Sequence record: MZ443771.1
Strand: one strand, 5' to 3'
DNA length: 64,000 nucleotides
Position numbers and translations under genes: made by a program. Shown piece by piece: positions 41,734-59,399 of this stretch. The notes under the pieces were generated by a model. That model was not told where the DNA came from and did no database searches. It was given only the letters and a program-made list of their open reading frames with translations. Every line of letters starts with the position of its first letter. Within the stretch, counting starts at the first letter, position 1.

Positions 41734-42546
41734 ATGCCAAACTTACGTGCTAAACCAGAAGACAAATTCTCTAAAGCTCGTTCTGCGAAGAACTCACCTG
41801 AACGTCAGGCTGCTGCTGAGAAGAAACGCACAACCCCACGCGGTCCGTCTTCTGCTAAACCTCGTCAGTTGCCGCCGGGCTATGGCTATAAGTCAAAAGC
41901 TACAGGCGAACGTGCGCCAGAGCGTGACGATAAAGAGTCCCAGAAACCTGATTTGAGTAAGAAAGACTGGGTTGCTCGTCGTGACGCAACGCCGAAGATG
42001 CGTGATGAAGAACGTGTATTCAATCTCGTTCACGCAATTCTGGCTGCATGGAAAGCGGATATCGGACACGCCGAACATACGGCAGCATCTTCTGGTATCA
42101 TCAAAGTGTCTCGTCGTAAAGTTGAAGGCGCATTGCGCGATCTCAAGAATACGCGCTTCACTAAAATCCCAACGCTCATCAATGAAATTCTGACACACTC
42201 TGATGTGTGTGAGGAATTCGGGATGTGGGTGTACGTCGAGCACGACACGCCGGATTGGATCTTCGTGCGTCTGCCTGAAGACAGCACGCCTGTGCTTCGC
42301 GCTGATATCGTCTACGACCGCACAGGTCAAACTGCTACGACGATCACGACTTCGAGTGAACCGCTGCTTGAAGTCTTAGGGGAAGACGACGAGCCAGAAA
42401 TGCTCGAATGCAATGAGCGCGATATTGAAGACCTTGAAACTAAGGCAATGCGCAAAGAGCTGATCGACAAGGGCATCATCAAGCCAGAAGCTGCTGATAA
42501 GCTGAGTCGACCGGATCTGATGAAGCTGTTAGCGTACTACGCATAA
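41734..42546 (+). CDS. Protein with basic disordered N-terminus and C-terminal HeH-like module
   Basis: K/R/P-rich first ~90 aa; IEDLETKAMRKELIDKGII...KLSRPDLMKLL; SD AAGGA. Confidence 0.8.
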   Translation: MPNLRAKPEDKFSKARSAKNSPERQAAAEKKRTTPRGPSSAKPRQLPPGYGYKSKATGERAPERDDKESQKPDLSKKDWVARRDATPKMRDEERVFNLVHAILAAWKADIGHAEHTAASSGIIKVSRRKVEGALRDLKNTRFTKIPTLINEILTHSDVCEEFGMWVYVEHDTPDWIFVRLPEDSTPVLRADIVYDRTGQTATTITTSSEPLLEVLGEDDEPEMLECNERDIEDLETKAMRKELIDKGIIKPEAADKLSRPDLMKLLAYYA

Positions 42547-42555
42547 GCAATAACG

Positions 42556-42585
42556 AGCAGGGCGCTGAAATATAGCTGCCCTGCT
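42556..42585 (+). terminator. Terminator-like hairpin
   Basis: AGCAGGGC...GCCCTGCT; weak T tract. Confidence 0.55.
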
Positions 42586-42596
42586 ATCTGCGAAGT

Positions 42597-42652
42597 ATGC
42601 AGAAAACTGGACAAAATCGTGGTTGTTATCTGACAGCCACCTATGCTACAAT
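42597..42652 (+). promoter_or_regulatory. Repeated phage promoter
   Basis: AAAACTGGACAAAAT-29nt-TACAAT; TACAATATATGCAGACGC identical to the 7238 copy. Confidence 0.78.
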
Positions 42653-42712: not shown

Positions 42713-44314
42713 ATGGCACGTATCGAAACTAACTCTAACCTGGTTGGCAAAACTATCATCCTGCTGAACGGCACCAAATCTAAAATCGAAGATGCTATCG
42801 CGTCCGGTTACAAGGTGAAAGGTCAGAGCAAACGTATCGCAACCCGCTGCGTTATCAAAGAGGGTTCTCACTTCCGTGAGATCGAGCGCATGAATCTGAG
42901 CCAGCTTGAAGATACCGGCGAAGGTTACGTCAAGCTGAAAGAAGCGAAAGCGTCCGGCAAGAAAACTGCCGGTAAGAAAGAAGCTGCAACGCCGAAAGCG
43001 TCCGGCAAGAAAACTTCTGGTAAGAAAGATGCGAAACCGTCGAAAGACAAAGAACCTAAAGTTCGTCGCAAATCTTCCGAAGAGCAGTCCGAAGATTATC
43101 AGAATCTGGCACACGCTATCATCAAAGGCGGCAAAGCTAAACCTGCAGTTGAAATCGAAACTGTTGACGAAGCGCTGACCGATACTGTGGCAAAACGTAT
43201 CGCCGATATCGTGCTTAACACTGACGTTGCGAAAGTGTGCGCTGATAACAAAACGCCGATCGCAAACGCCCTGGATGTTACTTACGGCGCCGAGTATGCT
43301 GCTGATGGTAACGTCATGCAGATCACTCTGAACCTGCAATACGCGAAGCCTGTCAAAGTGCTTGCTCGCCCTACGCTCGAAAATGCAGAAGCTATCGCAA
43401 TGCGAGCGCAGAAAATGATCGCGCCTAAGCTGTCTAAGAAGCTGGCGAAAGCGATTCGTGAAGCGTTCAATATCGAAGACGCAGACGAGCTGGAAGCAGG
43501 TACTATGCTGCTGAAAGACGGCGAAGAGTTTGTCTTCTACGGCGAATCTGCGAAGCACCTCGGCAAAGCGCTGCTGTATGTCGTAGCTACCGACAAGTTC
43601 AAATCTGTCCTTGGCTCTACGCTGGGTGAGTACGAAATCCCAGACGCAGAAGAAGAAAACGACGACGAGGAAGAAGTCGAAGAAGAGGAAGAAGAAGAGG
43701 TCGAAGAGGAAGAGGAAGAAGAAGACGGCGAAGAAGATAGTGAAGAAGACGGCGAAGAAGAAGATGCCGCCGAGTACGAATACGTCAAAGTCACTAAAGA
43801 CCATATCAGCATGGTTAACAAGAAAGTGACCGCGAAGTATCACGCCGCGCTGGCTGAACGCTTCAACACTACCGAAGAAGTTCTCGTCCCTGGCCTCGTA
43901 TTGACTGACGGCGACACAACGTTCGCGTACCTTGGCTGTGATAGCAAAGGCGGCCTGCTCGTTATCGACGTAGAAGCTGAGGCAGATGATGAAGATGTTC
44001 TGCTGTATAGCAAAGCGGATATCAAAACGCTGAACGACTTCAACCCTGTGATCGATAGCGGCCTCGTTTCTGACGACGAAGAAGAAGACGGTGAAGAAGA
44101 TACCGAAGACTTCGAAGACGGTAACGACGATGAAGAAGAAGAAGAAGACGGCGAAGACGAAGAAGAGAGCTTCGAATTTGACGACGAAGAATCTGTTGAC
44201 CTCGAAGATCTGTCTGACGACGAACTGCGTGAACGTGCCGTTGAGCTGGGTCTGACTACACCGCGCAAATCTGAAAACATGACCGGCGCACAACTGCGCA
44301 AGCTGCTGAAATAA
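42713..44314 (+). CDS. Multidomain basic/acidic low-complexity protein with C-terminal HeH-like module
   Basis: SD GAGGAG; K-rich linker, two E/D tracts, duplicated ~45-aa beta-module, LEDLSDDELRERAVELGL...MTGAQLRKLL. Confidence 0.88.
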   Translation: MARIETNSNLVGKTIILLNGTKSKIEDAIASGYKVKGQSKRIATRCVIKEGSHFREIERMNLSQLEDTGEGYVKLKEAKASGKKTAGKKEAATPKASGKKTSGKKDAKPSKDKEPKVRRKSSEEQSEDYQNLAHAIIKGGKAKPAVEIETVDEALTDTVAKRIADIVLNTDVAKVCADNKTPIANALDVTYGAEYAADGNVMQITLNLQYAKPVKVLARPTLENAEAIAMRAQKMIAPKLSKKLAKAIREAFNIEDADELEAGTMLLKDGEEFVFYGESAKHLGKALLYVVATDKFKSVLGSTLGEYEIPDAEEENDDEEEVEEEEEEEVEEEEEEEDGEEDSEEDGEEEDAAEYEYVKVTKDHISMVNKKVTAKYHAALAERFNTTEEVLVPGLVLTDGDTTFAYLGCDSKGGLLVIDVEAEADDEDVLLYSKADIKTLNDFNPVIDSGLVSDDEEEDGEEDTEDFEDGNDDEEEEEDGEDEEESFEFDDEESVDLEDLSDDELRERAVELGLTTPRKSENMTGAQLRKLLK

Positions 44315-44395
44315 TCTCGCTGTAAACTGAACGACTGTGCGGTTCAAATCGAGCCGCACATTTATTGACAACTAAGCTGATTGAGGAATCACACT

Positions 44396-45634
44396 ATGTC
44401 AAACGCAAACAAAAATCTGCTGAATGCCCGTGTTCGTCGTCTGGACGGTACTACCACTTACATCAACAAAGTGAACGCTAACGGTTATAGCACCGACGCG
44501 AAGGGCCCTCAAATCCCTGTGAAACGCATCGTGCTCGCGGGCAAAACGCTGAAAGAGATTGAAGCGCCCTACGCGAAAACTGAGCACGTTCTGATTGACG
44601 GCATCACTGTGAAGCTGAACAAGCGCCAGCAAAAAGATCTGCGCAACGATGAAATCGACGTTGACACGATCAAGCCTGATTTTAGTTCTCTGGTGTACAT
44701 CGACCCGGAAACAGGCAAGCCTGCTGTAGCGAAAGCTACGAAGCCGAAAGGCGGTGTGAAAGCGACGCGCGAGCGCAACAAAGACACGCGCTCTAAGAAA
44801 GAGCGTAAAGCAGAAGCAGACGCGTCGAGTGCTGACCTCGATATGATCCCACGCTCTGATGCGATTGACCGCAAAGCAGAGCTGGTGCAAATGATCGACG
44901 CGACAATCGCCGACGCAACGACGAAAGATCGTCGCAAGATGTTGAGCGAAGCGTTTGACATGGACTGGAAAGATGTTAAGCATCACGGTGGCAAGGGTGT
45001 TGTCAAGCACATGGGACGCAAGGCAGCACAACGCGCCTGTGATAAGCTGCGCGTAGCAACTACCAGCGATGCGTATATTAAGCAGATGCCCATCGAGCTT
45101 AAACGTCTTATTCAAGACGGTAAGCTGACGCTCAACAAGAAACAGATTGAGCGTGTGTTAGACGTGTTTGGGCTTGATATGCAGTTCTATGCAACTGCGA
45201 TGCAGACGCTGCTGGGTAATCTCAAGCTGTCGCTCGATAAATCTATCGAGAACCCGAAAGTGAAAGAGAAGAAAGCGAAACACAAACTCGCTGTGCCGAC
45301 CTACGCGTCTGAGAAAGAACAGACCAAGCGTGTGCGCAAGATGACTGTAAAACTCATCAAGCCGCCGAAGTCTGCAATGGCAGAGGCGAAAGCGCACATC
45401 AAAGAGTCGAAAGCGACTATCGCCAAGAAGCTGGGCATCAAGCCTGCTGACGTGAAGCGTGGTCTGCTGTGTTATAAACCGAACGGCGTTGAGCTGATGT
45501 TCGTAGCTTGCGACATGACCGGCCCTGTCTTCGTTGAGAAAGACGGTAGCGAGTGCGTAATGTCACACGCGAACGTGAAGCACACTTTCAACCTGACGCT
45601 GGGCACTAACTCTGAACTGGACGCGGCTGTATGA
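44396..45634 (+). CDS. Basic protein, partial paralogue of 42713-44314
   Basis: SD GAGGA; N-terminal 50 aa align ungapped with the upstream gene (14 identities by eye). Confidence 0.85.
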   Translation: MSNANKNLLNARVRRLDGTTTYINKVNANGYSTDAKGPQIPVKRIVLAGKTLKEIEAPYAKTEHVLIDGITVKLNKRQQKDLRNDEIDVDTIKPDFSSLVYIDPETGKPAVAKATKPKGGVKATRERNKDTRSKKERKAEADASSADLDMIPRSDAIDRKAELVQMIDATIADATTKDRRKMLSEAFDMDWKDVKHHGGKGVVKHMGRKAAQRACDKLRVATTSDAYIKQMPIELKRLIQDGKLTLNKKQIERVLDVFGLDMQFYATAMQTLLGNLKLSLDKSIENPKVKEKKAKHKLAVPTYASEKEQTKRVRKMTVKLIKPPKSAMAEAKAHIKESKATIAKKLGIKPADVKRGLLCYKPNGVELMFVACDMTGPVFVEKDGSECVMSHANVKHTFNLTLGTNSELDAAV

Positions 45635-46014
45635 CGAACAACGAGATTATCCTGACAGGTGTATTTGCTCAATTGTACTCGCGGCTGACTACAGCCGCTG
45701 TACTTGAAACGTATGTGTACTATTCTGATTTGGCCCCTGTAGTGTTTGGTGTGCAACTGTCCACCGTGAGCAATTCGCAGTACAACGCCTTGTGGGAACT
45801 CGTTGCGAAAACAATGCGCGTCGATATCGCAGCGGGCAGACCACCGCTTGCTGCGTTGTACGTGTCTCGCGCAACTGACGAGAAGACACCGAGCAAAAAG
45901 TTCTTCAAAGAATACTACAAACTCACGGGCGTACATCTGTCTGAGACAGACTGGCGAGCACTCGTTGAACATGTGTGGAAATCTTATGCACCAGATCTTC
46001 GGGAGCCATCATGA
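45631..46014 (+). CDS. Hypothetical protein (possible winged-helix)
   Basis: YSDLA...GRPPLAALYVSR..P.KKFF pattern; ATGA overlap. Confidence 0.6.
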   Translation: MTNNEIILTGVFAQLYSRLTTAAVLETYVYYSDLAPVVFGVQLSTVSNSQYNALWELVAKTMRVDIAAGRPPLAALYVSRATDEKTPSKKFFKEYYKLTGVHLSETDWRALVEHVWKSYAPDLREPS

Positions 46015-46472
46015 AAAAGGCCAAAGTTGTAATTAGTCGCGGTGGCTATAGACCGTCATCGCAAGAAGAATCTCAAAAGCTGGTCGCTGAGTTTCTTCTC
46101 GGTAATATCGGAATCAACCCTACTGTTATCAGCCAGCAAATGTTGCTCAACATTGCGAACTATAACTACCTGACGTCTATCGTAGACACGGGCAAAGCTA
46201 CGCAAGCGAACCAGAGCACATTGCATAAAACTGTAAAAGAACTTAATGCGTTCTGTAGATCGCACAAAATTCCTCTGGGTTTGCTAATTATGCCCCATAC
46301 TTCGACCAGCGATTATGCCGGTGATGAGGTGGTAGCGATTCCTTGGGAGCATGTGCGCTCGAACACATTGAGCCAGTCGGCCATCGAATCTCTGTTTGAA
46401 ACAGTTGAAGCTGATGGTTACCCGCAGTTTGTGACTGATGCGAAGACAGTAGAGGGATACAATGTTTTATGA
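46011..46472 (+). CDS. Hypothetical protein
   Basis: SD GGGAG; ATGA overlap. Confidence 0.7.
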   Translation: MKKAKVVISRGGYRPSSQEESQKLVAEFLLGNIGINPTVISQQMLLNIANYNYLTSIVDTGKATQANQSTLHKTVKELNAFCRSHKIPLGLLIMPHTSTSDYAGDEVVAIPWEHVRSNTLSQSAIESLFETVEADGYPQFVTDAKTVEGYNVL

Positions 46473-47742
46473 TCACGTATTCAACCACGACGAGAAGCAA
46501 TTGCTTTTGAAGGTGGCTGAGTCTAAATATCTGGTGCGGCTAGACTGCCCCGACTATTTGAAGAAGTCGAAACACGCGATTGAGATCAGACATACTGTGA
46601 CCAACCGTGGCGAGCAACGTCGAAGCGGTACGATAACAACCGCATTCGTACCGCGCATTCATTCTGCGACTGTGCAGCGACTGGTACGTGAAGTGCGAGA
46701 CAGCCAAAGCAAAAGCGCGTCTGAGGGACTCGCTGCGTTATTCGAGTTAGGCCTGGGTGTGCCGAAGCAACGTGATATCGCAACGTACCTGCGCGACTAC
46801 TCGCGTGAGAACGATAAGAAGGGTGTGGGTATCAAGTATATCCGCAAACTGATTAATGAGTATCACCGCAAGCACCGTCATAGTTTTGCTGGCAGTCGCT
46901 GGTTGATGCCCGCTGCGTATACAGCGAACATGCTCAACATGCAGTCGTTCATTCATCTGAAAGAGAACGGTTACTCGAAGAAAGTCAAAGTACCTGACGG
47001 CGTTCCTGTGATCTTCATCTATCAGAACACGAACCACGAGAATGCAACGTACAGCATGTGTGACGCATTCGTGATTAGCCCGCTCGGTTACCCGATGCCG
47101 TTCGCTCAAATCGCGTTGCGCCCTGAGTTCAAAGCTGCGCCGAAAGAGTTCAGCTCGAAAGCGTTTCGTGGTAAGAGCATGTACGCTATGGTAATGGGTG
47201 TGCTGCACTGGGAGAAGGGCGATGCGCTCGATAACTTCCGTGAGCTGGTGGAGATTGACGACGAGCCGTATCTGACGTTGCTTAGTGATGAACGTTATGC
47301 TGATCGTCGTTCGCCTGAGTATCAAGCTCTACTGGACGAACGTGCTGCGATGAATGCGAAGCGCCAGAAGTGGAGTGACGTGATTGCGAAGTATGGCAAC
47401 ACGACACGCACACTCAAGCCAGAACAGGCTGAGCGTCTGGCAAAAGCCGAAGCGTTCTTCATTAAGCGCAAAGAGTTCTTGGACGCTTTCGACAAGTTCG
47501 AAAAGAAAGAGAACAGCAAAGCCGCCCGTAAGTTTGCTGCCGCATCTGCATCGTTCGCTGCTGTTGATTGTGGTGTTGTGATTGACCGAACAACGTATCG
47601 CTCTGTGTCGTCAGGCTTGGATGTTGTGAACAAGATTCTCACTCGCTGGGGATTCACGACAATCAACACTGTCGATAGTAGTCAGAAGAAATCCATTTTA
47701 ACCTATGACCTGAAAAATGCAAGTCGCATTTGGTCTCTGTAA
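46462..47742 (+). CDS. Basic hypothetical protein
   Basis: 426-aa ORF. Confidence 0.8.
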   Translation: MFYDHVFNHDEKQLLLKVAESKYLVRLDCPDYLKKSKHAIEIRHTVTNRGEQRRSGTITTAFVPRIHSATVQRLVREVRDSQSKSASEGLAALFELGLGVPKQRDIATYLRDYSRENDKKGVGIKYIRKLINEYHRKHRHSFAGSRWLMPAAYTANMLNMQSFIHLKENGYSKKVKVPDGVPVIFIYQNTNHENATYSMCDAFVISPLGYPMPFAQIALRPEFKAAPKEFSSKAFRGKSMYAMVMGVLHWEKGDALDNFRELVEIDDEPYLTLLSDERYADRRSPEYQALLDERAAMNAKRQKWSDVIAKYGNTTRTLKPEQAERLAKAEAFFIKRKEFLDAFDKFEKKENSKAARKFAAASASFAAVDCGVVIDRTTYRSVSSGLDVVNKILTRWGFTTINTVDSSQKKSILTYDLKNASRIWSL

Positions 47743-50798: not shown

Positions 50799-50810
50799 TG
50801 TCGTCTGATT

Positions 50811-50840
50811 GAGTGGCTCGAAAGGGCCACTCGCTTTTCT
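50811..50840 (+). terminator. Intrinsic terminator
   Basis: GAGTGGCTC-GAAA-GGGCCACTC then GCTTTTCT. Confidence 0.7.
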
Positions 50841-50854
50841 GGGGATCTGTAAAC

Positions 50855-51685: not shown

Positions 51686-51731
51686 ATCTGTAAAACTTTC
51701 CTGCAATCGAATCTGTAAACACTAATTGAAG
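51686..51731 (+). promoter_or_regulatory. CTGTAAAYA motif (candidate phage-specific promoter), two copies
   Basis: ATCTGTAAAAC and AATCTGTAAACACTAATTGAAG, intergenic. Confidence 0.55.
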
Positions 51732-52358: not shown

Positions 52359-52438
52359 AAATCTGTAAATATTAAGTATGCAGCGAGATAAAAAGTTCTC
52401 GCTGCCTGTCTCTCGAAATCTGTAAATATTAATTGAAG
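52359..52438 (+). promoter_or_regulatory. CTGTAAATA motif, tandem copies around a hairpin
   Basis: AAATCTGTAAATATTAA twice; CAGCGAGA/TCTCGCTG stem between them. Confidence 0.6.
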
Positions 52439-53344: not shown

Positions 53345-53397
53345 TTTTGTAAAAAGTTTCAAAATTTCTTGCAGACGTATGTTGAATATAATAATGT
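53345..53397 (+). promoter_or_regulatory. Sigma70-like promoter with AT-rich UP element
   Basis: TTGCAG-17nt-TAATGT preceded by A/T tracts; lacks the CTGGAC box. Confidence 0.5.
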
Positions 53398-53483
53398 ACG
53401 TCTACAGGAAATCAAAACCTGAACAAATTTATCTTTTCATCCAGCGGTGAAAACGCCGCATCAAAACAAAGTAAGGAAATCCA

Positions 53484-54002
53484 ATGAGCAAGAAAATCGT
53501 TAGCGGCCTGAACAAAGAAATCCGCGCCCTGGACAAGTCTGAGAAAAACCTGGTTAAAACTGCTGCTGGCCTGACCAAAGAAGCAGAAGCGATCGCTGAA
53601 CGTCGCGCTAACCTGACTGCCCAGGTTGAAGCTCTGCAAACTGGCGGTGACGCTGCTCCAGCTAAAGCTGCTAAGCCTGCGAAAGCAGACAAGAAAGCTA
53701 AAGCTGAAAAAGCGGCCAAGCCTGCTAAAGCAGAAAAAGCTGGCAAGAAGGCTAAAGCTGAGAAAGCTGAGAAGCCTGCCAAAGCTGAAAAAGCTGGTAA
53801 GAAAGCTAAAGCAGAAAAAGCTGAAAAGCCTGCTAAAGCTGACAAGAAAGCTAAAGCTGCTAAGGCAGACAAAAAATCCGCTAAGCCTGCCAAAGCTGAA
53901 AAAGCTGGCAAGAAAGCAAAAGCTGAAAAGCCGGCCAAAGCTGATAAAAAAGCTAAAGGCAAAAAGAAAGAAGCCGAAGACTTCGACTTCGATATGGAAT
54001 AA
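53484..54002 (+). CDS. Histone H1-like (PAKA repeat) protein
   Basis: N-terminal coiled coil, 7 PAKA units within K/A/E repeats, acidic tip EDFDFDME; SD AAGGA. Confidence 0.85.
   Translation: MSKKIVSGLNKEIRALDKSEKNLVKTAAGLTKEAEAIAERRANLTAQVEALQTGGDAAPAKAAKPAKADKKAKAEKAAKPAKAEKAGKKAKAEKAEKPAKAEKAGKKAKAEKAEKPAKADKKAKAAKADKKSAKPAKAEKAGKKAKAEKPAKADKKAKGKKKEAEDFDFDME
53650..53965 (+). repeat. Imperfect coding tandem repeats (KAEKAEKPAKAEKAGKK)
   Basis: Recurrent GCTAAAGCWGAAAAAGC units. Confidence 0.85.
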
Positions 54003-54101: not shown

Positions 54102-54596
54102 ATGTCTGCTGAACATCTTCTCAATGACGACCTACCAGACGATACTCGCGTCGTTAACGTTCCCCAAACAAAAGAAAAGCCTAGCTACTACGAGCTAATG
54201 TCTCTGCGCTTAGAAGCTGGTGCACGTCTTTCCCGCGCTATCAAAACGTTACGTGATGCTAACGTTCTCCCAACATCTGGCACTGGTTCAACGCTTCTCG
54301 CTGCTGCTCTAGACGTAGCCGAACGTCACTTCGCTGATATCTGCATGGGACTTGTTCCTGTTCGTGACGGTGCTGACGTATGCACAATCAAAATGCGTGA
54401 AGACCTTCCCGCGTGTGTCGAAGCGTTTCGTATTATCGTCATGGAACATGCGCAACGTGAAGCCCTTGAGCGTGAGTGCCGCAACATGATCGCTGACGGT
54501 AACGGCTTCAAGATTCTCACTCAGCCTCAAGTGCTGCACATCGAAAACAAACACGTCTGTAATGAGGACTGCAATCATGGGCCAGAAACTGTCTGA
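54102..54596 (+). CDS. Hypothetical protein
   Basis: SD GAGG. Confidence 0.75.
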   Translation: MSAEHLLNDDLPDDTRVVNVPQTKEKPSYYELMSLRLEAGARLSRAIKTLRDANVLPTSGTGSTLLAAALDVAERHFADICMGLVPVRDGADVCTIKMREDLPACVEAFRIIVMEHAQREALERECRNMIADGNGFKILTQPQVLHIENKHVCNEDCNHGPETV

Positions 54597-55323
54597 GCAA
54601 ATCAACCGCTATTTCAATCTCATGGAGAAAATCCGTGAGCAAATGTACCGCGTACTGCCTGTATCTAATCGCTACCTGTGTGTAGTAAGTTTCAGCACTC
54701 AACTACAGGCACTCCAGTGTGTGCTTGTAAGCAAAGAGTCGCTCATGGAAGCGAAGCTCATTGAAGGCCTAACGGGGCAAGAGCTGATCACCTATGGTCA
54801 GTACATGAGAACAGCCGAAGAGTGGGTCGCCAACGGTATGCAAGATGATTACCCGTTCACTCAGGATAAAGATGTGTACGAGGAGTACCGCAGCCTGACA
54901 CGCGACGAACAGATGCCTGTTCCTGAAATGGATGATGGCGAAGAAGATGATCTCGACGTACAGGAGATGGACGATCTGCGTACATCAATTCTCTGCGCCG
55001 ACAAAGCCACACTGATGCAGATGTTTGCTGACGAAGGCTTAGGTACAAAAGGAACTGCTGCTGATATGGATGTGGGTCAGTTGCAGGATGCTCTGTGCGA
55101 TCACTATGGCCTTAACCCGGATGTTGGCGTCAAAGTTGTTGACGTTGTTGGTGCGTTGGTTGAGCGTTTAGAAAACATGCCTAAACACGAAGCTCTGAAA
55201 GAAGCGCATCACCTGACAAAAGAGGAACTGCTCAGTCTCGCAGACGCATGGGGAATTGAGAAAGACGCACACGAAAGCACAATGCGCTCTCTGATTAAGG
55301 GTCATATACTGCGCCGTACTTAA
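54577..55323 (+). CDS. Protein with two C-terminal HeH-like modules
   Basis: ADKATLMQMFADEGL...MDVGQLQDALCDHYG; LTKEELLSLADAWGI...TMRSLIKGHI. Confidence 0.78.
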   Translation: MGQKLSEQINRYFNLMEKIREQMYRVLPVSNRYLCVVSFSTQLQALQCVLVSKESLMEAKLIEGLTGQELITYGQYMRTAEEWVANGMQDDYPFTQDKDVYEEYRSLTRDEQMPVPEMDDGEEDDLDVQEMDDLRTSILCADKATLMQMFADEGLGTKGTAADMDVGQLQDALCDHYGLNPDVGVKVVDVVGALVERLENMPKHEALKEAHHLTKEELLSLADAWGIEKDAHESTMRSLIKGHILRRT

Positions 55324-55330
55324 CTCAAAC

Positions 55331-55386
55331 TCTGCAAATAGTTGGACAGAATGCGGGTATATAAGAATAGTCTTATGTGATATAAT
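55331..55386 (+). promoter_or_regulatory. Repeated phage promoter upstream of gyrB
   Basis: TCTGCAAATAGTTGGACAGAAT-28nt-TATAAT with extended TG. Confidence 0.75.
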
Positions 55387-55460
55387 AGCTAGAGACAAGT
55401 AGTGTCTGAACTTGCTAATATCGAGTAGTCTACATGCTACTCACTCAGGAGAACACGAAA

Positions 55461-57491
55461 ATGGCCAAAGCGCCTAAAGCCGTTAAGGTTAAAAAGAAAA
55501 CGGGAGATGGGTCCGAACAAGAAGGATTCATGATCGCAGAAGGTCTTGATGGTATAAGACTGAATCCCGGGATGTACATGGGGGAGCGCGGTCCCGATAT
55601 GGCTTACCGTGCTGTCAAAGAACCTGTAGATAACGATTACGACGAATACATCGCAGGTCGAAACAAACTTATCGAAGTAGTCATTGATTACGATAACGAC
55701 CTGAACGTTGTCGCAGATATGGCGAAAGGTATTCCTACCGACTTCAAGAAATTGAAAGATGGTTCGAAAGAAACGATCATGACCGCAGCGTTTAGCCGTG
55801 CTCACGCTGGTGGCAAGTTCGATGATAAAGCATATAAGACCTCTGCCGGTACTCACGGTGTAGGCGTTGCAGCACTGAACGCAATCTCAAGTCGCCTGCG
55901 TGTGTGGTCAATGTACAAAGGCGGTTGTGCGTATCAGATGTGGGAGTGCGGCGTTGCCAAATCTGGCAAAGACCCGAAACAAGTTAAAGCAGTAGACAAA
56001 GATGTTATGTCTCTGCTGCGTGAAAAGAAACACAACAAGTACGGTACGATTGTCGCGTGGACGCTCGACCAGACTGTCGTGTCTGCTGACGTGCAGCGTG
56101 GTAAGAAGCTGCCTAAGAACTATCGTCACGCTGCACCAGACCCAGCGCAACTTGGTTCGTGGCTGCGTAACATGTCTATGCTCAACCCTGGACTCGAAGT
56201 TCGCCTGACGTTGATCAAGAAAGGCAAGCGCAAAGAGTTCACTTTCATCAACAAGAAAGACCTTGTGCATGTCGTGAAGACGATGGTGGAAGAACGTGAG
56301 CTGGGTTCTGTTGGCAAGCCGTTCATCTTCAAAAACGACAACATCACTGCTGCGCTGACGTGGACAGATCACGCCGACACTGATAACTTCCTCAGTTTCG
56401 TTAACACAAGCCCTACAATTGACGGCGGGTGGCACGTTGTAGGTTTCCGTGATGCGCTGTTCGAAGCAATCAAACCTTTCATGAAAGAATCGAAAGGCAA
56501 AGGCAAGAAGAAGCAGAACTTCAAACAGGAAGATTTGCTTATCGGCCTGACTGGTATGTTCGACTGGCGTATGCACGGCGCTCAGTACACGTCACAGGTT
56601 AAAGACAAGCTGGCGAGCCGTGTTGAAAAAGAAGTATACGAGATGCTGAAAGATGCGTTCGTGAAATACTTCAAGGACAATAAGAAAGTCGCAACGACGA
56701 TCATCAAACGTGCCGAAGCGATGAACAAAGGCCGCGAAGAATTGTCCGCTGTTGTTAAGTCTATGGCAGACACGAAGAAGAAGCTGAAGGGCAACGCACT
56801 CCCTGCTGACCTGATATCTGCGCTCAAGTGTAAGCCCCACGAACGTGAGCTTATCGTTGTAGAAGGTGACTCTGCTGGTGGTACTGCGAAACACGCACGT
56901 AACCCTGACCATCAGGAAGTTATGCTCGCTGGTGGTAAACCGCTCAACGGTCTGAAAGCAAGTCTGGCTGATGTGCTCAAACACAAAGAAGTTCAAGGCA
57001 TGTTGGTATCTGTTGGTGCAGACCTGAAATCGTTAGACCCGAAAGCAGAAGCGCCGAAACTGAGTACGAAGAATCTGCGTATCGGTAACCTACTGTTCCT
57101 GATGGATGCTGACCCAGACGGCTTCCACATCGCAACGTTGTTCCTGGGTGTTATCTATCGTCTGCTGCCTGACCTGATGAAAGAAGGGCGTGTGTGGATT
57201 GTCGATGCTCCTCTGTATAACGTGATGCACAAAGGCATTCACTATGGCGGTATGTCATTTGACGAATGCCGCGCGAAAGCGCCTGCTGCTGTAAAAGATA
57301 AAGAAATCGTTCGTGCAAAAGGTTGGGGTGAAGTCGAACCTGATGTGCTCGAAGCGATTGCATTTAATCCGAAGACTCGCCGCTTGATTCGTGTGAACCC
57401 ATTCACTAGCGTTGAGCAAGAGCGCTTCTTCCGTGGTGTGCTGGCAGAAGATGCAGTCCATCGTCGTCGTCTGCTGGGTCTGGAGGAATAA
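55461..57491 (+). CDS. gyrB: Type IIA topoisomerase B subunit (GyrB/ParE-like)
   Basis: EPVDN..DE, HAGGKFD..YKTSAGTHGVG, EGDSAGG, MDADPDG..I. Confidence 0.95.
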   Translation: MAKAPKAVKVKKKTGDGSEQEGFMIAEGLDGIRLNPGMYMGERGPDMAYRAVKEPVDNDYDEYIAGRNKLIEVVIDYDNDLNVVADMAKGIPTDFKKLKDGSKETIMTAAFSRAHAGGKFDDKAYKTSAGTHGVGVAALNAISSRLRVWSMYKGGCAYQMWECGVAKSGKDPKQVKAVDKDVMSLLREKKHNKYGTIVAWTLDQTVVSADVQRGKKLPKNYRHAAPDPAQLGSWLRNMSMLNPGLEVRLTLIKKGKRKEFTFINKKDLVHVVKTMVEERELGSVGKPFIFKNDNITAALTWTDHADTDNFLSFVNTSPTIDGGWHVVGFRDALFEAIKPFMKESKGKGKKKQNFKQEDLLIGLTGMFDWRMHGAQYTSQVKDKLASRVEKEVYEMLKDAFVKYFKDNKKVATTIIKRAEAMNKGREELSAVVKSMADTKKKLKGNALPADLISALKCKPHERELIVVEGDSAGGTAKHARNPDHQEVMLAGGKPLNGLKASLADVLKHKEVQGMLVSVGADLKSLDPKAEAPKLSTKNLRIGNLLFLMDADPDGFHIATLFLGVIYRLLPDLMKEGRVWIVDAPLYNVMHKGIHYGGMSFDECRAKAPAAVKDKEIVRAKGWGEVEPDVLEAIAFNPKTRRLIRVNPFTSVEQERFFRGVLAEDAVHRRRLLGLEE

Positions 57492-57492
57492 C

Positions 57493-57750
57493 ATGGACTT
57501 CAATCTTGGCTGCATGTCAGACGATACGCAGATTCGTTTTCTGGATATGCCTGTGCTCGAACACAAGCAGTTGACCGCCGAGCAGCATAAGCAGTACGGT
57601 GAACTTATGCCTAAGATTCGTGAGCTGTCAAAGCACTGCATCGTATCTGCGCATCGCGTAGTTGACGGCAAACCTGTGGAGCGTGTGCAACTGCAAATGT
57701 CACGTACAACTCTGGATAAGATTAACGCGATTGCCAAAGGGGAACTGTAA
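57493..57750 (+). CDS. Small hypothetical protein between topoisomerase subunits
   Basis: SD GGAGG; TAATG coupling to gyrA. Confidence 0.75.
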   Translation: MDFNLGCMSDDTQIRFLDMPVLEHKQLTAEQHKQYGELMPKIRELSKHCIVSAHRVVDGKPVERVQLQMSRTTLDKINAIAKGEL

Positions 57751-59399
57751 TGGCAGTTAAGCCGAAGAAAGTTAAAGTCGTGAAGAAAGCGACTGCGGTG
57801 GCGAAGCCTGCAAAGGTGAAGTTGAAATCGAAAGCTGTTGCTGTCGATGACATGCCGAAAAAGAAAAAGAAGAAAGGCGAAGTTGCTGTAGCCAGCACTG
57901 GTGCTTCATTGTACCCGATGCTTGGGCAAGACGAGTCTCTCATTCGTGACGAGAACCTCGCAGACTATACGCGTCGTGCTCTCTTCCAGTACGGTTCATA
58001 TGTTGTTGAAGACCGAGCGATTGCTGACTATCGTGACGGCCTCAAGCCTGTACACCGTGCGTTACTTTGGTCATTGTGTGACTTGGGCTTGCGTCCCGGA
58101 GGCGCATTCAAGAAGTCTGCGCGTACAGTGGGTGATGCGTTAGGTAAGTATCACCCACACGGTGACGCTGCTTGTTATGGTGCGATGGTCACTATTGCAA
58201 ACACAGTGCCTCCTGCTGTAGCTGGTCAAGGTAACTGGGGCGACCCTGTAGCACCTGCCGCGGCGATGCGTTACACAGAAGCGAAAATGAGTAAGTTTGC
58301 TGGTAGCTTCCTGCTGGACCCTGACTATCTTGAAGTAACGCCTATGGTGGACAACTTCTCAAACGATATGAAGATTCCACTGTATCTGCCAGCGCTGTTG
58401 CCGTACATGTTGTTTAACGGTAGTGTGCCTGCGCCAGCATACGGCGTTAAGTGTGGCAACCCTACATTCAGCTTCACGTCAGTCGCCAAAGTCGTTTGCG
58501 ATATGCTCAACGGCAAAGAGTATAGCGCGAAGAAACTCGCTGACACGCTCAAAGTCAACCACGAGTATGGTTGCTTGGACGTAAGCTCGGATGAAGACTT
58601 CCTCGCTCTCATGTCTACTGGTCGTGGTAAAGTAACCTACGAACCGCAGATGAAGATTGACGAGAAAGCGAAGACGATCACGATTCAGACCTACGTGCCG
58701 GGTGGAATGTCGAACAACTCCACCATCACTAAGAAGCTGGAGAAGATTGCCGAGTGGCCGGGCGTTGTATCTGCGTCTAACGCCAGTTCTAAAAAGAACA
58801 AAGATGCAGGTCCGTGGGGCGCAGCATTCGCCATCAAATGTCGTGGCAGCGAAGACCAGCTGTATGAACTCGCAACCAAGATTCAGCGTGAAGTAACATC
58901 TGCCATCAACTACTCGTTGGGTGTTACCGTTCGCCGTGCAGACGCATCGAACAAGTTTATGTACCTGTCGTATGTGAACTACTTCAAAGCGTGGGTTGCA
59001 TATCGCATCAAGCTGGAAACAGCGATGCTCAAAAACAAATTGGCCAAAGCAGAACGGCAGTTGTACCTCAATGAGGTATATTTGTGGGCTGTGGATAACA
59101 TGGACAAGTTGCTCAAAGCTCTGCCTAAAGTTCTTATGGCTAAAGACCCTGACGAAATGCTGGCGAAGATTTTCAAGATTAAACTTGAAAGCGCCAAGAT
59201 CATACTCGACCGTCAGGTTCGTAAGCTGGCAAGACTCGAACGCGCAGCATTAGCCCAAAAAGTTAAAGAGCTGAAGGCTGAGATTGCCGAATATAAAGGC
59301 GGTCTGAAAGAACCAGGCAAATACGCTGCTGCTGGTACTGCTGCAAAAGTTAAGGCTTATCTGAAATCACCAGACGATAAACTCCCTGTCGCTCTGTGA
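57750..59399 (+). CDS. gyrA: Type IIA topoisomerase A subunit (GyrA/ParC-like, no C-terminal pinwheel)
   Basis: DGLKPVHR, KSARTVG, YHPHGD, AAMRYTE; 549 aa. Confidence 0.95.
   Translation: MAVKPKKVKVVKKATAVAKPAKVKLKSKAVAVDDMPKKKKKKGEVAVASTGASLYPMLGQDESLIRDENLADYTRRALFQYGSYVVEDRAIADYRDGLKPVHRALLWSLCDLGLRPGGAFKKSARTVGDALGKYHPHGDAACYGAMVTIANTVPPAVAGQGNWGDPVAPAAAMRYTEAKMSKFAGSFLLDPDYLEVTPMVDNFSNDMKIPLYLPALLPYMLFNGSVPAPAYGVKCGNPTFSFTSVAKVVCDMLNGKEYSAKKLADTLKVNHEYGCLDVSSDEDFLALMSTGRGKVTYEPQMKIDEKAKTITIQTYVPGGMSNNSTITKKLEKIAEWPGVVSASNASSKKNKDAGPWGAAFAIKCRGSEDQLYELATKIQREVTSAINYSLGVTVRRADASNKFMYLSYVNYFKAWVAYRIKLETAMLKNKLAKAERQLYLNEVYLWAVDNMDKLLKALPKVLMAKDPDEMLAKIFKIKLESAKIILDRQVRKLARLERAALAQKVKELKAEIAEYKGGLKEPGKYAAAGTAAKVKAYLKSPDDKLPVAL

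What the first reader, a model, noticed from the sequence alone, without database searches (positions are those of the whole stretch)
41734..59399. Candidate phage nucleoid/condensate system: poly-acidic scaffolds, H1-like protein and topoisomerase in one locus
Seen: within ~18 kb are a ~1010-aa acidic protein, a protein with a ~70-residue pure D/E tract, a 533-aa mixed-charge protein, several Lys-rich proteins, an H1-like PAKA-repeat protein and a Lys-tagged type II topoisomerase. Most show highly expressed codon bias and carry HeH modules. Known: D/E tracts act as histone chaperones and DNA mimics (nucleoplasmin, nucleolin), and oppositely charged disordered proteins (prothymosin-alpha/H1) form complexes and coacervates. 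I see no chimallin or PhuZ in this window. Inference: a shell-independent way to compact, compartmentalise or shield phage DNA, i.e. a chromatin-like or phase-separated replication factory.
Basis: partly seen in the sequence, partly recalled or inferred. Interest (0 to 1): 0.82.

Follow-up and report, generated by a model that had tools for sequence, protein, structure and literature searches.

The report
Conserved super-charged protein module in jumbo phage
A family of giant bacteriophages carries, next to its DNA topoisomerase genes, a conserved set of very abundant proteins that are either extremely acidic or extremely lysine-rich; they probably organise DNA and DNA enzymes by charge, but no experiment has tested this.

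Summary
The window is the last 64 kb of Erwinia jumbo phage pEa_SNUABM_20 (Alexandravirus, Lu11/PaBG/Y3 clade). The charged proteins are real. Their net charge holds across 20 related genomes while identity falls to 23-60%: the 1009-aa protein is -163 to -206, the 263-aa polyacidic protein -84 to -106, and the H1-like protein +26 to +32.

Five of them use synonymous codons like the major capsid protein. They sit behind sigma70-like or tandem 'ATCTGTAAA' promoter motifs, which are shared with replication genes. None carries the 'GCTAATTT' motif found before structural genes.

A core trio recurs in PaBG, Lu11 and distant metagenomic phages, usually close to topoisomerase II:
- a basic beta-domain protein (phrog_22271);
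- a polyacidic protein;
- a coiled-coil K/A/P-repeat protein.

In some relatives the beta-domain is fused to its own acidic tail. Lys-rich tags also occur on many other replication enzymes in this genome.

Pfam, PHROGs, NCBIfam, PDB sequence searches and AlphaFold2/Foldseek assigned no function. The 'HeH' label is unproven, and the H1-like protein has no histone fold. I found no chimallin or PhuZ homologue in the genome.

Best reading: an abundant, non-virion pairing of DNA-coating basic proteins with acidic chaperone or hub partners. A phase-separated, nuclease-shielding compartment is possible but untested.

The parts
37077..38726 (+). It carries two copies of the same ~40-aa helix-linker-helix module and a short acidic tract.
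   Evidence: BLASTP to the 263-aa protein, E 3e-4. An HMM built only from 263-aa orthologues finds it at E 4e-6. Sequence.
41489..41532 (+). Early-type promoter-like site: upstream element TGGACAAAAT, -35 TTGTCT, 17-nt spacer, TG-extended -10 TACAAT.
   Evidence: It is one of 7 such sites, all in the window.
41734..42546 (+). 270-aa protein: basic disordered N-terminus, central domain, C-terminal helix-linker-helix module.
   Evidence: No Pfam or PHROG family.
42608..42652 (+). Early-type promoter-like site for the 533-aa gene.
42713..44314 (+). 533-aa blocky polyampholyte (net -68). Order of parts: N-terminal 56-aa domain, Lys-rich linker, domain, poly-E tract, domain, acidic tract with DFxF, C-terminal module.
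   Evidence: Alignment A7. phrog_33433, function unknown. Net charge -56 to -83 in 20 genomes. Fop rank 14 of 319.
44336..44360 (+). Terminator-like hairpin after the 533-aa gene.
44396..45634 (+). 412-aa Lys-rich protein (net +27). It shares its N-terminal 56-aa domain with the acidic 533-aa protein.
   Evidence: hhalign probability 95%, E 2e-8. Net charge +26 to +34 in 20 genomes, although length varies 310-470 aa and identity falls to 23%.
45631..46472 (+). Two small near-neutral proteins (127 and 153 aa), conserved in synteny.
46462..47742 (+). 426-aa basic globular protein (net +19) of unknown function.
   Evidence: Only 23 homologues among 5.8 billion proteins, all within the clade and none with a Pfam domain. 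No PDB sequence match.
47769..50798 (+). 1009-aa acidic protein (net -191). Folded N-terminal (~35-240) and C-terminal (~675-940) alpha/beta domains flank helical modules separated by disordered D/E tracts.
   Evidence: AlphaFold2 mean pLDDT 65.9, with segment confidences. No Foldseek PDB match below E 0.04. Net charge -163 to -206 in 20 genomes. Fop rank 9.
50810..50833 (+). Terminator-like hairpin after the 1009-aa gene.
50855..51685 (+). 276-aa protein with an N-terminal coiled coil. An ATCTGTAAA motif lies immediately upstream.
51686..51721 (+). Two tandem ATCTGTAAA (middle-type) promoter motifs.
   Evidence: The same motif is annotated 'putative middle/late promoter' in the Lu11 record.
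51779..52324 (+). 181-aa basic protein (net +15): a tandem all-beta domain followed by a Lys-rich tail. It belongs to phrog_22271.
   Evidence: AlphaFold2 pLDDT 84.6. 64 representative clusters in 1.84 billion proteins. Foldseek finds no PDB analogue, and its significant (E<=0.001) BFVD matches are all uncharacterized phage proteins, the identifiable ones from Alexandra and PaBG. Fop rank 6.
52361..52428 (+). Two tandem ATCTGTAAATATTAA promoter motifs ahead of the polyacidic gene.
   Evidence: There are 2-4 tandem copies at the same place in Yoloswag, JA29, fHe-Yen9-02 and Lu11.
52474..53265 (+). 263-aa polyacidic protein (47% D/E, net -96). Order of parts: small helical N-terminal domain, Lys-rich patch, module, ~80-aa D/E tract, module, acidic tail ending EDFDDEDEDEDDE.
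   Evidence: Net charge -84 to -106 in 20 genomes. PaBG and Lu11 counterparts are 150 and 159 aa with net -93 and -99. Fop rank 4.
53368..53408 (+). Conserved hairpin or palindrome enclosing a TTGCAG-N17-TATAAT promoter-like site upstream of the H1-like gene.
   Evidence: 18 predicted pairs, 5 of them with compensatory changes, in 11 phages.
53484..54002 (+). 172-aa 'H1-like' protein (29% K, net +26): ~55-aa predicted coiled-coil N-terminus, K/A/P/E repeats, acidic-aromatic tip EDFDFDME.
   Evidence: Net charge +26 to +32 in 20 genomes. The (D/E)F(D/E)F tip is conserved in Yoloswag, JA29, Yen9, PaBG, Lu11 and L033. No Pfam family.
54102..55323 (+). Two overlapping genes (164 aa and 248 aa). 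The second is mildly acidic and carries the helix-linker-helix module.
   Evidence: E 0.04, borderline.
55343..55390 (+). Early-type promoter-like site for the topoisomerase operon.
55461..57491 (+). Topoisomerase II large (GyrB-like) subunit with a Lys-rich N-terminal tag, MAKAPKAVKVKKK. The start at 55461 is more likely than 55434.
   Evidence: Pfam DNA_gyraseB 1e-27, Toprim and GyrB_C. RefSeq start and AGGAG ribosome-binding site. Tags also present in PaBG and Lu11.
57750..59399 (+). Topoisomerase II GyrA/ParC-like subunit with a ~45-aa Lys-rich N-terminal tag.
   Evidence: Pfam DNA_topoisoIV 9e-58. Homologues outside the clade align only from residues ~57-93 onward, mostly 59-81. Tags shown.

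Best explanation
The locus encodes an abundant, non-virion, early/middle-expressed module of oppositely charged proteins that work as partners on phage DNA.

**Proposed roles (inferred)**
- The basic members are the 181-aa beta-domain protein, the coiled-coil K/A/P-repeat 'H1-like' protein and the 412-aa protein. They coat or bridge DNA through their Lys-rich tails.
- The polyacidic members are the 263-aa, 533-aa and 1009-aa proteins. They act as detached acidic tails, that is, DNA-like polyanions. They would chaperone, buffer and displace the basic proteins.
- Through their charge and a shared acidic-aromatic motif (DFxF), the acidic proteins would also act as hubs for the Lys-rich tags on topoisomerase II and other replication enzymes.
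- The net effect would be an electrostatically organised phage nucleoid or replication zone. It would work like histone plus acidic chaperone (prothymosin-alpha/H1, nucleoplasmin) or like the acidic tails of HMGB1, SSB, T4 gp32 and T7 gp2.5.

**Shown**
- The anatomy of the proteins.
- Conservation of charge and gene order.
- Codon bias, promoter-motif classes, gene fusions and linkage to topoisomerase II.

**Inferred**
- DNA binding, mutual binding, hub function and any compaction.
For: 1. Net charge and length are held nearly constant in 20 genomes and in PaBG and Lu11, while sequence identity falls to 23-60%. Selection therefore appears to act on charge itself.
2. The trio (beta-domain basic protein, polyacidic protein, coiled-coil K-rich protein) is adjacent in Alexandravirus, Yoloswagvirus, Salmondvirus, fHe-Yen9-02, PaBG, Lu11 and the metagenomic contig L033.
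3. In distant members of phrog_22271 the beta-domain is fused to its own poly-D/E tail (P0074, P0075, P0076, P0102). This is Rosetta-stone evidence that the basic and acidic parts act together.
4. About half of that family (27 of 59) end in a Lys-rich tail followed by an acidic tip, often with a terminal hydrophobic residue (DDDDEF, DEDF, DDDGDL). This is the architecture of SSB-type hub proteins.
5. The module lies 1.4-3 kb upstream of topoisomerase II here and directly upstream in L033 and L035. It lies 8-13 kb away in PaBG and Lu11.
6. Codon usage equals that of the capsid and sheath genes. Two to four tandem promoter motifs precede the polyacidic gene. Both suggest stoichiometric rather than catalytic amounts.
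7. The promoter motifs are those shared with the clamp loader, dCMP deaminase and ParB-like genes, not the motif found before structural genes and the endolysin.
8. PaBG counterparts match none of the 14 virion protein masses.
9. Lys-rich tags occur on the DnaB-like helicase, ParB-like protein, clamp loader, UvsX-like recombinase, SSB and both topoisomerase II subunits.
Against: - No domain with known DNA-binding, chaperone or hub function was detected. Pfam, PHROGs, NCBIfam, PDB sequence and profile searches and Foldseek on two AlphaFold2 models were all negative.
- Expression timing rests on motif association, not on transcript data. The Lu11 record calls the same motif 'middle/late'.
- The apparent sigma70 promoter of the H1-like gene lies inside a covarying hairpin and may not be a promoter.
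- The PaBG virion proteome lists only 14 abundant bands, so it is an insensitive test.
- Lys-rich tags would bind DNA without any acidic partner.
- The phage's own head module also contains a D/E-rich protein (gp143), which shows that acidic tracts can serve assembly roles in this phage.
Confidence: 0.4

Rival explanations
1. The oppositely charged disordered proteins coacervate with DNA into a shell-less, phase-separated compartment. The compartment concentrates Lys-tagged enzymes and excludes host nucleases, making it a functional substitute for the chimallin nucleus.
For: - All the evidence for the best explanation applies.
- The 533-aa protein has blocky charge patterning.
- The 1009-aa protein is a multivalent chain of helical modules and acidic disordered regions.
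- Predicted abundance is at capsid level.
- Chimallin and PhuZ are absent.
- There is precedent for phase separation in phage infection (SPO1, ChmC).
Against: - Nothing computed here bears on demixing, selective permeability or nuclease exclusion.
- The acidic proteins have a large net negative charge, so together with DNA they would need a large pool of counter-charge. The summed positive charge of the basic partners in the locus is much smaller than the summed negative charge.
- Lys-rich tags are present in relatives regardless of where the module sits.
Confidence: 0.12
2. The polyacidic proteins are nucleic-acid mimics aimed at the host. They would sequester abundant basic host proteins such as HU, H-NS, Fis, RNase E RNA-binding segments, restriction enzymes or defence sensors. 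The Lys-rich proteins would separately coat or shut off the host nucleoid.
For: - D/E tracts of ~80-100 residues have a linear charge density close to that of single-stranded nucleic acid.
- Early/middle promoter motifs and very high predicted abundance fit stoichiometric titration of abundant host proteins.
- Known phage precedents include acidic DNA or RNA mimics such as T7 Ocr, T4 Arn and phiKZ Dip. This point rests on established knowledge and was not tested here.
Against: - The module is conserved with near-constant charge across phages of Erwinia, Dickeya, Yersinia and Pseudomonas.
- In relatives it is fused to the phage's own beta-domain protein.
- Both points argue for a phage-internal partnership rather than an arms-race factor. 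Anti-defence genes are usually variable and accessory.
- There is no homology to any known mimic.
Confidence: 0.2
3. They are head-assembly or packaged proteins. They would be acidic scaffold or core proteins and basic internal proteins, like the T4 prohead core and internal proteins or the phiKZ inner body. They would be made in capsid-like amounts and removed or injected with the DNA.
For: - Codon bias equals that of structural proteins.
- Scaffold proteins are typically acidic, and a D/E-rich protein does sit in this phage's head module.
- The Lu11 record labels the shared promoter motif 'middle/late'.
Against: - The genes lie ~90-130 kb from the head, tail and protease genes, on the opposite strand, among replication and recombination genes.
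- They lack the GCTAATTT motif found before structural genes, the portal and the endolysin.
- No PaBG counterpart matches a virion band.
- Linkage is to topoisomerase II, not to capsid genes.
Confidence: 0.08
4. There is no joint system. These would be independent, individually functioning proteins whose low-complexity charged tracts come from replication slippage in GAA/GAC and AAA/GCT repeats, and whose neighbourhood is inherited synteny only.
For: - The tracts are tandem-repetitive at the DNA level.
- Gene order in this clade is conserved genome-wide.
Against: - Slippage-driven tracts should vary in length. Instead net charge is held within about 10-15% across genera and hosts.
- Fusions exist.
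- The proteins share modules, a DFxF motif and an N-terminal domain.
- They share promoter architecture.
Confidence: 0.1

Closest known systems
Linker histone H1 with prothymosin-alpha, and nucleoplasmin-type acidic histone chaperones (eukaryotes)
   Same: - A Lys/Ala/Pro-rich polycation is paired with a poly-D/E polyanion of high, conserved net charge.
- The expected mode of action is disordered electrostatic complex formation and competition with DNA.
   Different: - There is no homology. The H1-like protein has no winged-helix globular domain, and the acidic proteins have no nucleoplasmin core (Pfam negative).
- The phage H1-like protein has a coiled-coil N-terminus and an acidic-aromatic C-terminal tip.
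- This is a bacterial virus context.
Acidic C-terminal tails of DNA-binding proteins (E. coli SSB tip, T7 gp2.5, T4 gp32, HMGB1)
   Same: - In the 181-aa family, a DNA-binding-type basic region is followed by an acidic tip that often ends in a hydrophobic residue.
- In some members the acidic tail is fused, and in this phage it is a separate gene.
- Such tails both autoinhibit DNA binding and recruit partner enzymes.
   Different: - The beta-domain is not recognisably an OB fold (Foldseek negative).
- The linker is Lys-rich rather than Gly/Pro/Gln-rich.
- The acidic tracts are 10-fold longer.
- The phage has a separate annotated SSB.
Bacterial 'histone H1-like' Lys/Ala/Pro-repeat proteins (Pseudomonas AlgP, Chlamydia Hc1/Hc2, mycobacterial HupB tail, PhaF/PhaM)
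   Same: The composition and repeat type (KAAK/PAKA) of residues 57-164 of the 172-aa protein.
   Different: - No family match in Pfam or NCBIfam.
- The architecture is different.
- The resemblance is recalled from knowledge and composition, not tested by homology.
Chimallin-based phage nucleus (Chimalliviridae) and other phage replication compartments or condensates (ChmC, SPO1)
   Same: - Jumbo phage setting.
- The possible goal of organising and protecting replicating DNA.
   Different: - No chimallin or PhuZ homologue.
- Alexandra was included only for comparison in the Chimalliviridae study, not as a chimallin-encoding phage.
- No multisubunit RNA polymerase was seen in the annotation.
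- Any compartment here would have no protein shell.
T4-type type II DNA topoisomerase (gp39/gp52/gp60)
   Same: GyrB-like ATPase plus Toprim subunit, and a GyrA/ParC-like cleavage subunit.
   Different: - Both subunits carry Lys-rich N-terminal extensions of ~20 and ~45 residues. These are shared with PaBG and Lu11 but fall outside the region that aligns with other phage enzymes.
- To my knowledge the T4 enzymes lack such tags. I did not test this here.

Membership tests
Linker histone H1/H5 | Winged-helix globular domain (Pfam Linker_histone) | tested here: not met
   No Pfam family at E <= 0.01 for the 172-aa protein. The N-terminal half is a predicted coiled coil, judged from the sequence.
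Linker histone H1/H5 | Lys/Ala/Pro-rich disordered tail | tested here: met
   29% K, with KAEK/PAKA 18-aa repeats over residues 57-164.
HeH / SAP / LEM / Rho_N helix-extended-helix domains | Match to the family profiles or to solved members | tested here: not met
   Pfam at E up to 10 lists none of these families for six module-bearing proteins. A profile of 8 modules against all PDB sequences finds no SAP, LEM, HeH or Rho entry. Homologues carry no precomputed Pfam domain.
HeH / SAP / LEM / Rho_N helix-extended-helix domains | Two short helices joined by an extended linker of about 10 residues | tested here: inconclusive
   The AlphaFold2 model of the 1009-aa protein shows helix 377-386, a non-helical stretch 387-396 and helix 397-407, at pLDDT ~85. 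This is compatible but not specific.
Chimalliviridae phage nucleus | Chimallin shell protein | tested here: not met
   tblastn and phmmer with phiKZ gp54 against the pEa_SNUABM_3 genome and the window gave a best E of 5.8. This is a single-sequence search, so very remote homologues could be missed.
Chimalliviridae phage nucleus | PhuZ tubulin | tested here: not met
   phiKZ gp39 gave a best E of 1.4.
Type IIA DNA topoisomerase | GHKL ATPase/transducer, Toprim, and GyrA/ParC breakage-reunion domain | tested here: met
   DNA_gyraseB 1.3e-27, Toprim 6e-9, DNA_gyraseB_C 1e-7, DNA_topoisoIV 8.7e-58.
Nucleoplasmin-type histone chaperone | Pentameric beta-sandwich core domain | tested here: not met
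   No Pfam hit in any acidic protein. Only the acidic tract is shared.
SSB-type OB-fold hub protein | OB fold | tested here: not met
   The AlphaFold2 model of the 181-aa protein (pLDDT 84.6) has no significant PDB match (best E 0.02, TM 0.14-0.19).
SSB-type OB-fold hub protein | Disordered linker ending in an acidic tip with a terminal hydrophobic residue | tested here: met
   27 of 59 family members have at least 3 D/E in the last 10 residues, and many end in F or L. In this phage the tip is on the neighbouring H1-like protein (EDFDFDME).
Phage scaffold / internal head proteins | Location in the head module, late expression, and presence in proheads or virions | tested here: not met
   The genes lie far from the head genes on the other strand. 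There is no late-type GCTAATTT motif. No mass matches the PaBG virion bands. Expression and virion content were not measured directly.
Structured DNA-mimic proteins (Ocr, ArdA, Arn) | Homology or a folded surface mimicking B-DNA | tested here: inconclusive
   No family hit. Its tract is expected to be disordered.

The most novel reading that the evidence does not exclude
A whole clade of chimallin-less jumbo phages (Lu11/PaBG/Y3/Alexandra and metagenomic relatives) may build its replication zone from a dedicated polyelectrolyte kit. Polyacidic scaffold proteins of fixed charge (about -95, -70 and -190) and Lys-rich DNA coats would form a charge-driven condensate on phage DNA. Lys-rich N-terminal tags on topoisomerase II, recombinase, clamp loader, helicase, ParB and SSB would act as targeting signals into it. 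This would be a shell-less analogue of a nucleus, with a charge-based 'localisation signal'.
Probability: 0.12. Interest if true: 0.9.

Novelty: new variant of a known kind. Interest (0 to 1): 0.66.

Why it matters
- **A second organising principle.** Jumbo phages outside the Chimalliviridae replicate 250-kb genomes in the open cytoplasm, and how they organise and protect that DNA is unknown. This module is predicted to be among the most abundant phage products and is conserved across hosts. If it is a polycation/polyanion system that organises DNA and recruits Lys-tagged enzymes, it would be a second principle for phage replication factories, quite different from the chimallin nucleus. It would also be a bacterial-virus counterpart of histone and acidic-chaperone chemistry.
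- **Annotation.** The work gives a testable function to phrog_22271 and four other unknown-function PHROGs matched by these proteins.
- **A simple recognition rule.** The module can be found as three adjacent genes near topoisomerase II: a basic beta-domain protein, a protein of more than 45% D/E with net charge about -95, and a coiled-coil K/A/P-repeat protein ending in DFxF.
- **If the rival decoy reading is right instead,** these would be the largest nucleic-acid-mimic proteins known in phages.

Tried and rejected
**Searches that gave nothing**
- Pfam, PHROGs and NCBIfam scans of all cluster proteins found only unknown-function PHROGs and noise.
- PDB sequence searches with the 426-aa and 1009-aa proteins, and with a profile of the 40-aa module, found nothing meaningful. 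The dTALE hit is a repeat artefact.
- Large-database homologue searches for the 426-aa, 1009-aa and 263-aa proteins found in-clade hits only, with no Pfam domain.
- Foldseek of the 1009-aa and 181-aa AlphaFold2 models against the PDB gave no significant match. BFVD's significant matches were uncharacterized phage proteins, the identifiable ones from the same clade.
- Profile-profile comparison of the 533-aa and 181-aa families showed no relationship.
- Rfam and tRNA scans of the window were empty.
- The generic sigma70/terminator scan was not enriched over shuffles. It was useful only for the two TG-extended sites and two hairpins.
- Literature searches found no description of these proteins, and no transcriptome for the clade.

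**Corrections to my own reading**
- I first concluded that PaBG and Lu11 lack the cluster, because it is not upstream of their topoisomerase II. That was wrong. A profile search found the trio 8-13 kb downstream.
- I first read the site upstream of the H1-like gene as a plain early promoter. The covarying hairpin makes that uncertain.
- An HMM of the module built from all six proteins only re-found its own training set, so it was circular. I replaced it with a model built from the 263-aa orthologues alone.

Full report
**Identity of the sequence.** The region is 100% identical to Erwinia phage pEa_SNUABM_20 (MZ443771, 265,871 bp). The window is the last 64 kb of that record. The phage belongs to genus Alexandravirus. 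This genus is part of the 'hairy myovirus' jumbo clade, with Y3, Yoloswag, the Dickeya phages AD1 and JA11/JA29, Yersinia phage fHe-Yen9-02 and the Pseudomonas phages PaBG and Lu11. Public records annotate every gene of the finding as 'hypothetical protein', except the two topoisomerase II subunits.

**The observation.** All the ORFs exist on the + strand at the stated places.

| Window coordinates | Length | Key composition | Net charge |
|---|---|---|---|
| 47769-50798 | 1009 aa | 24% D/E | -191 |
| 52474-53265 | 263 aa | 47% D/E | -96 |
| 42713-44314 | 533 aa | blocky mixed charge | -68 |
| 44396-45634 | 412 aa | 14% K | +27 |
| 51779-52324 | 181 aa | pI 10 | +15 |
| 53484-54002 | 172 aa | 29% K | +26 |

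- The 263-aa protein has an 80-residue window of at least 80% D/E, with a few S and G interspersed.
- The 172-aa protein has about 4.7 copies of an 18-aa KAEK/PAKA repeat.
- None of the other ~70 ORFs of the window comes near these values.
- Pfam confirms the topoisomerase: GyrB, Toprim and GyrB_C in 55434-57491, and DNA_topoisoIV in 57750-59399.
- Both subunits start with Lys-rich extensions. Outside the clade, homologues of the small (GyrA-like) subunit align only from residues ~57-93 onward, mostly 59-81.
- The large subunit most likely starts at 55461 (MAKAPK...), behind an AGGAG ribosome-binding site.

**Conservation.** Gene order is the same in Yoloswag, JA29 and fHe-Yen9-02. In 20 related genomes fetched from IMG/VR, net charge is held within a narrow band while identity to the window drops to 23-60%.

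| Protein | Net charge across 20 genomes | Note |
|---|---|---|
| 1009-aa | -163 to -206 | |
| 263-aa | -84 to -106 | length 250-275 aa |
| H1-like (172 aa) | +26 to +32 | |
| 533-aa | -56 to -83 | |
| 412-aa | +26 to +34 | length 310-470 aa, identity down to 23% |
| 181-aa | +11 to +16 | |

This pattern points to selection on charge rather than on sequence. Free slippage of the GAA/GAC and AAA/GCT repeats seen at the DNA level would not produce it.

**A core trio reaches well beyond Erwinia phages.**
- A profile of the 181-aa protein finds 64 representative clusters among 1.84 billion proteins, all about 170-260 aa and all in phrog_22271, whose function is unknown.
- Foldseek against viral models and a local profile search place members in PaBG and Lu11.
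- In PaBG the member is followed by a 150-aa protein (67% D/E, net -93) and then a 202-aa protein (33% K, net +31). That last protein has a coiled coil, PAKA-type repeats and a C-terminal DDDFEDFDDLD.
- Lu11 has the same arrangement, with net charges of -99 and +25.
- So the trio is: a basic beta-domain protein, a polyacidic protein of about -95, and a coiled-coil K/A/P-repeat protein ending in an acidic-aromatic tip.
- I had first concluded that PaBG and Lu11 lack the cluster, because it is not upstream of their topoisomerase II. In fact it lies 8-13 kb downstream.
- In a 94-kb metagenomic contig (L033) the order is: large acidic protein, 181-like protein, polyacidic protein, H1-like protein, then GyrB-like topoisomerase.
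- In a 205-kb contig (L035) the 181-like beta-domain is fused to an Arg/Ala/Lys-rich N-terminus and to its own poly-D/E tail. It is followed by a coiled-coil basic protein and sits directly upstream of topoisomerase II.
- Other family members (P0074, P0075, P0102) show the same fusion.
- Of 59 aligned members, 27 end in an acidic tip, often after a Lys-rich tail and often with a terminal F or L.
- These fusions are the strongest computational sign that the basic and acidic components act together.

**Expression level.** With E. coli optimal codons, the 263-, 181-, 172-, 1009- and 533-aa genes rank 4, 6, 7, 9 and 14 of 319 ORFs in the genome. The major capsid protein ranks 3. This is not just amino-acid composition, because synonymous choices follow the top structural genes:
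- Leu CTG is 0.77 in the five genes, 0.80 in structural genes and 0.38 in the rest;
- Thr, Ile, Arg and Ser behave likewise.

The 412-aa protein, the 426-aa protein and the small topoisomerase subunit are unremarkable.

**Expression timing.** Three promoter-like motif classes can be separated.
- *Sigma70-like sites.* These have a TG-extended -10 and a conserved upstream TGGACAAAAT element. There are seven, all in the window. They precede the 270-aa gene, the 533-aa gene, the topoisomerase operon and the gene at 59753.
- *ATCTGTAAA.* There are 23 copies in the genome, always in the sense orientation. In the cases where I measured it, the motif lies mostly 39-68 nt before the start codon. It precedes the clamp loader, dCMP deaminase and ParB-like genes, among others. 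By my own rough estimate about 2 copies would be expected by chance.
  - It occurs in tandem pairs before the 181-aa and 263-aa genes.
  - Two to four tandem copies precede the polyacidic gene in Yoloswag, JA29, fHe-Yen9-02 and Lu11.
  - The Lu11 record annotates it as a 'putative middle/late promoter'.
- *GCTAATTT.* There are 15 copies. Most on the minus strand sit just upstream of genes in the structural and lysis regions, such as gp137, gp151, gp189 and the endolysin, and one precedes the portal gene. None is in the finding region.

The locus also lies on the opposite strand from, and roughly 90-130 kb away from, the capsid, protease, sheath and tube genes. Its neighbours include SSB, a UvsX-like recombinase and topoisomerases.

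None of the PaBG cluster proteins matches the mass of any of the 14 proteins in the published PaBG virion proteome (PMC7412058, Table 1). Taken together, these proteins look early/middle and non-structural. That conclusion rests on motif association and an insensitive proteome, not on direct measurement.

**Anatomy of the proteins.**
- *The 1009-aa protein.* The AlphaFold2 model (27-sequence alignment, mean pLDDT 65.9) shows a well-folded N-terminal alpha/beta domain (~35-240, pLDDT 80-90) and a C-terminal alpha/beta domain (~675-940). Between them are four helical blocks, separated by disordered acidic tracts at 328-358, 445-485 and 642-673. Foldseek finds no PDB analogue (best E 0.04).
- *The 181-aa protein.* It models confidently (pLDDT 84.6, 59-sequence alignment) as two tandem beta units with long hairpins, followed by a disordered Lys-rich tail. 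It has no PDB analogue, and its significant viral matches are all uncharacterized phage proteins, the identifiable ones from Alexandra and PaBG.
- *The 533-aa protein.* Its conserved layout is: a 56-aa N-terminal domain, a Lys-rich linker, a domain, a poly-E tract, a domain, an acidic tract with DDDFxF, and a C-terminal 40-aa module.
- *Shared N-terminal domain.* The basic 412-aa neighbour has the same N-terminal domain (hhalign 95%, E 2e-8).
- *Shared acidic-aromatic motif.* It recurs as EDFDFDME at the end of the H1-like protein, DFxF in the 533-aa protein, EDFD in the 1009-aa protein and EDFDDEDEDEDDE at the end of the 263-aa protein.

**The 'HeH' claim.**
- A ~40-aa helix-linker-helix module is truly shared. 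PHROG profiles of the 533-aa and 263-aa families cross-hit at it.
- BLASTP links the 263-aa protein to the 549-aa protein at 37077.
- A model built only from 263-aa orthologues finds the 549-aa protein (E 4e-6), the 533-aa protein (5e-5) and, weakly, the 248-aa protein (0.04) among 319 ORFs.
- Pfam at E up to 10 reports no HeH, SAP, LEM or Rho_N, and a module profile finds no such structure in the PDB.
- Homology to HeH is therefore unproven. Only the secondary-structure pattern fits.

**The 'H1-like' claim.** The 172-aa protein has no linker-histone domain. It resembles only the tail of H1, or bacterial AlgP/Hc1-type repeats, in composition.

**Lys-rich tags are a genome-wide theme.** In the 99%-identical pEa_SNUABM_3 genome, Lys-rich segments occur on:
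- the DnaB-like helicase;
- the ParB-like protein (N-terminus);
- the clamp loader (N-terminus);
- the UvsX-like recombinase (N-terminus);
- SSB (alternating K and D blocks);
- both topoisomerase II subunits;
- several unknown proteins.

PaBG and Lu11 topoisomerase II subunits carry them too. The tags are therefore older and broader than this locus. They would raise DNA affinity on their own, and they would also be natural ligands for polyacidic proteins.

**Chimallin and PhuZ.**
- Searches with phiKZ gp54 and gp39 against the whole pEa_SNUABM_3 genome and the window found nothing below E = 1.
- The Chimalliviridae study included Alexandra only for comparison, not as a chimallin-encoding phage.
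- The annotation shows a sigma factor but no multisubunit RNA polymerase.

**Interpretation.** The evidence best fits an abundant, non-virion module of oppositely charged partners acting on phage DNA and its enzymes.
- The basic members are the 181-aa beta-domain protein, the H1-like protein and the 412-aa protein. They would coat or bridge DNA.
- The polyacidic members would behave as detached acidic tails. They would chaperone and displace the basic proteins and offer a polyanionic platform for Lys-tagged enzymes such as topoisomerase II.
- The nearest working analogies are H1 with prothymosin-alpha, nucleoplasmin, and the acidic tails of HMGB1, SSB, gp32 and gp2.5.
- I put this at about 0.4.

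The rivals stand as follows.
I put it at about 0.12.
- *A host-directed nucleic-acid-mimic role* is plausible given the abundance and timing. However, the deep, charge-exact conservation across hosts and the fusions to a phage protein argue against an arms-race factor. About 0.2.
- *A scaffold or internal-protein role* is disfavoured by location, promoter class and the PaBG proteome. About 0.08.
- *Mere synteny of unrelated low-complexity proteins* is disfavoured by the charge conservation, shared modules and fusions. About 0.1.

**Novelty.** I found no paper describing these proteins or the module. The comparative overview of jumbo phages by Iyer et al. does not mention them. No member has a homologue of known function. 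The physical principle, a polycation/polyanion pair on DNA, is known from eukaryotic chromatin and from acidic tails of DNA-binding proteins. I therefore rate it a new variant of a known kind. It could be more than that if a charge-based compartment or targeting system is shown.

Noticed in passing
window 53368-53408: An 18-pair hairpin or palindrome encloses the -10-like TATAAT upstream of the H1-like gene. It is kept with compensatory changes on both arms in 11 related phages (5 pairs changed on both sides). It could be an RNA processing or stability hairpin (RNase III-type) in a read-through transcript, or a co-evolving operator.
   Followed up: partly
window 17523, 26366, 39228, 41489, 42608, 55343, 59430 (all + strand): Seven sigma70-like promoters share an unusual conserved upstream element, (C)TGGAC(A/G)(A/G)AAT, about 32 nt before a TG-extended -10. 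All lie in the last 50 kb of the genome. This may be an activator site or an UP-like element that defines an early regulon.
   Followed up: partly
window 28-2559, and NC_061445 genome-wide: Lys-rich N- or C-terminal tags, often starting MAK..., occur on the UvsX-like recombinase (window 28-2559), DnaB-like helicase, ParB-like protein, clamp loader, SSB and several unknown proteins. This is a clade-wide habit of tagging DNA enzymes.
   Followed up: partly
window 5450-7090: A 546-aa basic protein (pI 9.9, 11% K) is the only gene in the window preceded by the late-type GCTAATTT motif (record position 207242). It may be a packaged or virion-associated basic protein.
   Followed up: no
window 61492-62358: RefSeq annotates this as 'DNA topoisomerase'. 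[quoted passage not shown] If this gene is its counterpart, the locus would carry two unrelated topoisomerases within 7 kb. Pfam did not recognise it.
   Followed up: no
NC_061445 108779-110833 (L004 8779-10833), outside the window: The protein labelled 'ATPase', between the head maturation protease and the major capsid protein, contains a 139-residue D/E-rich tract and has high codon bias. It is probably the scaffold protein and mis-named.
   Followed up: no
NC_061445 86707-88030 (L003 36707-38030), outside the window: A 1.3-kb stretch has no annotated gene. Two ATCTGTAAATAA motifs sit at its upstream end. It may be an unannotated gene or a non-coding RNA.
   Followed up: no
window 42713-42880 and 44396-44570: The acidic 533-aa protein and the basic 412-aa protein are encoded by adjacent genes and share a 56-residue N-terminal domain (hhalign 95%, E 2e-8). 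They look like a paralogous pair with opposite charge.
   Followed up: yes
window 55434-55461: The longest ORF of the topoisomerase II large subunit starts at 55434. However, AGGAG lies 8 nt before the ATG at 55461, and RefSeq uses that start. It gives the MAKAPK... N-terminus typical of this phage's tagged proteins.
   Followed up: yes
This is almost certainly a compositional artefact of its D/E run.
   Followed up: no
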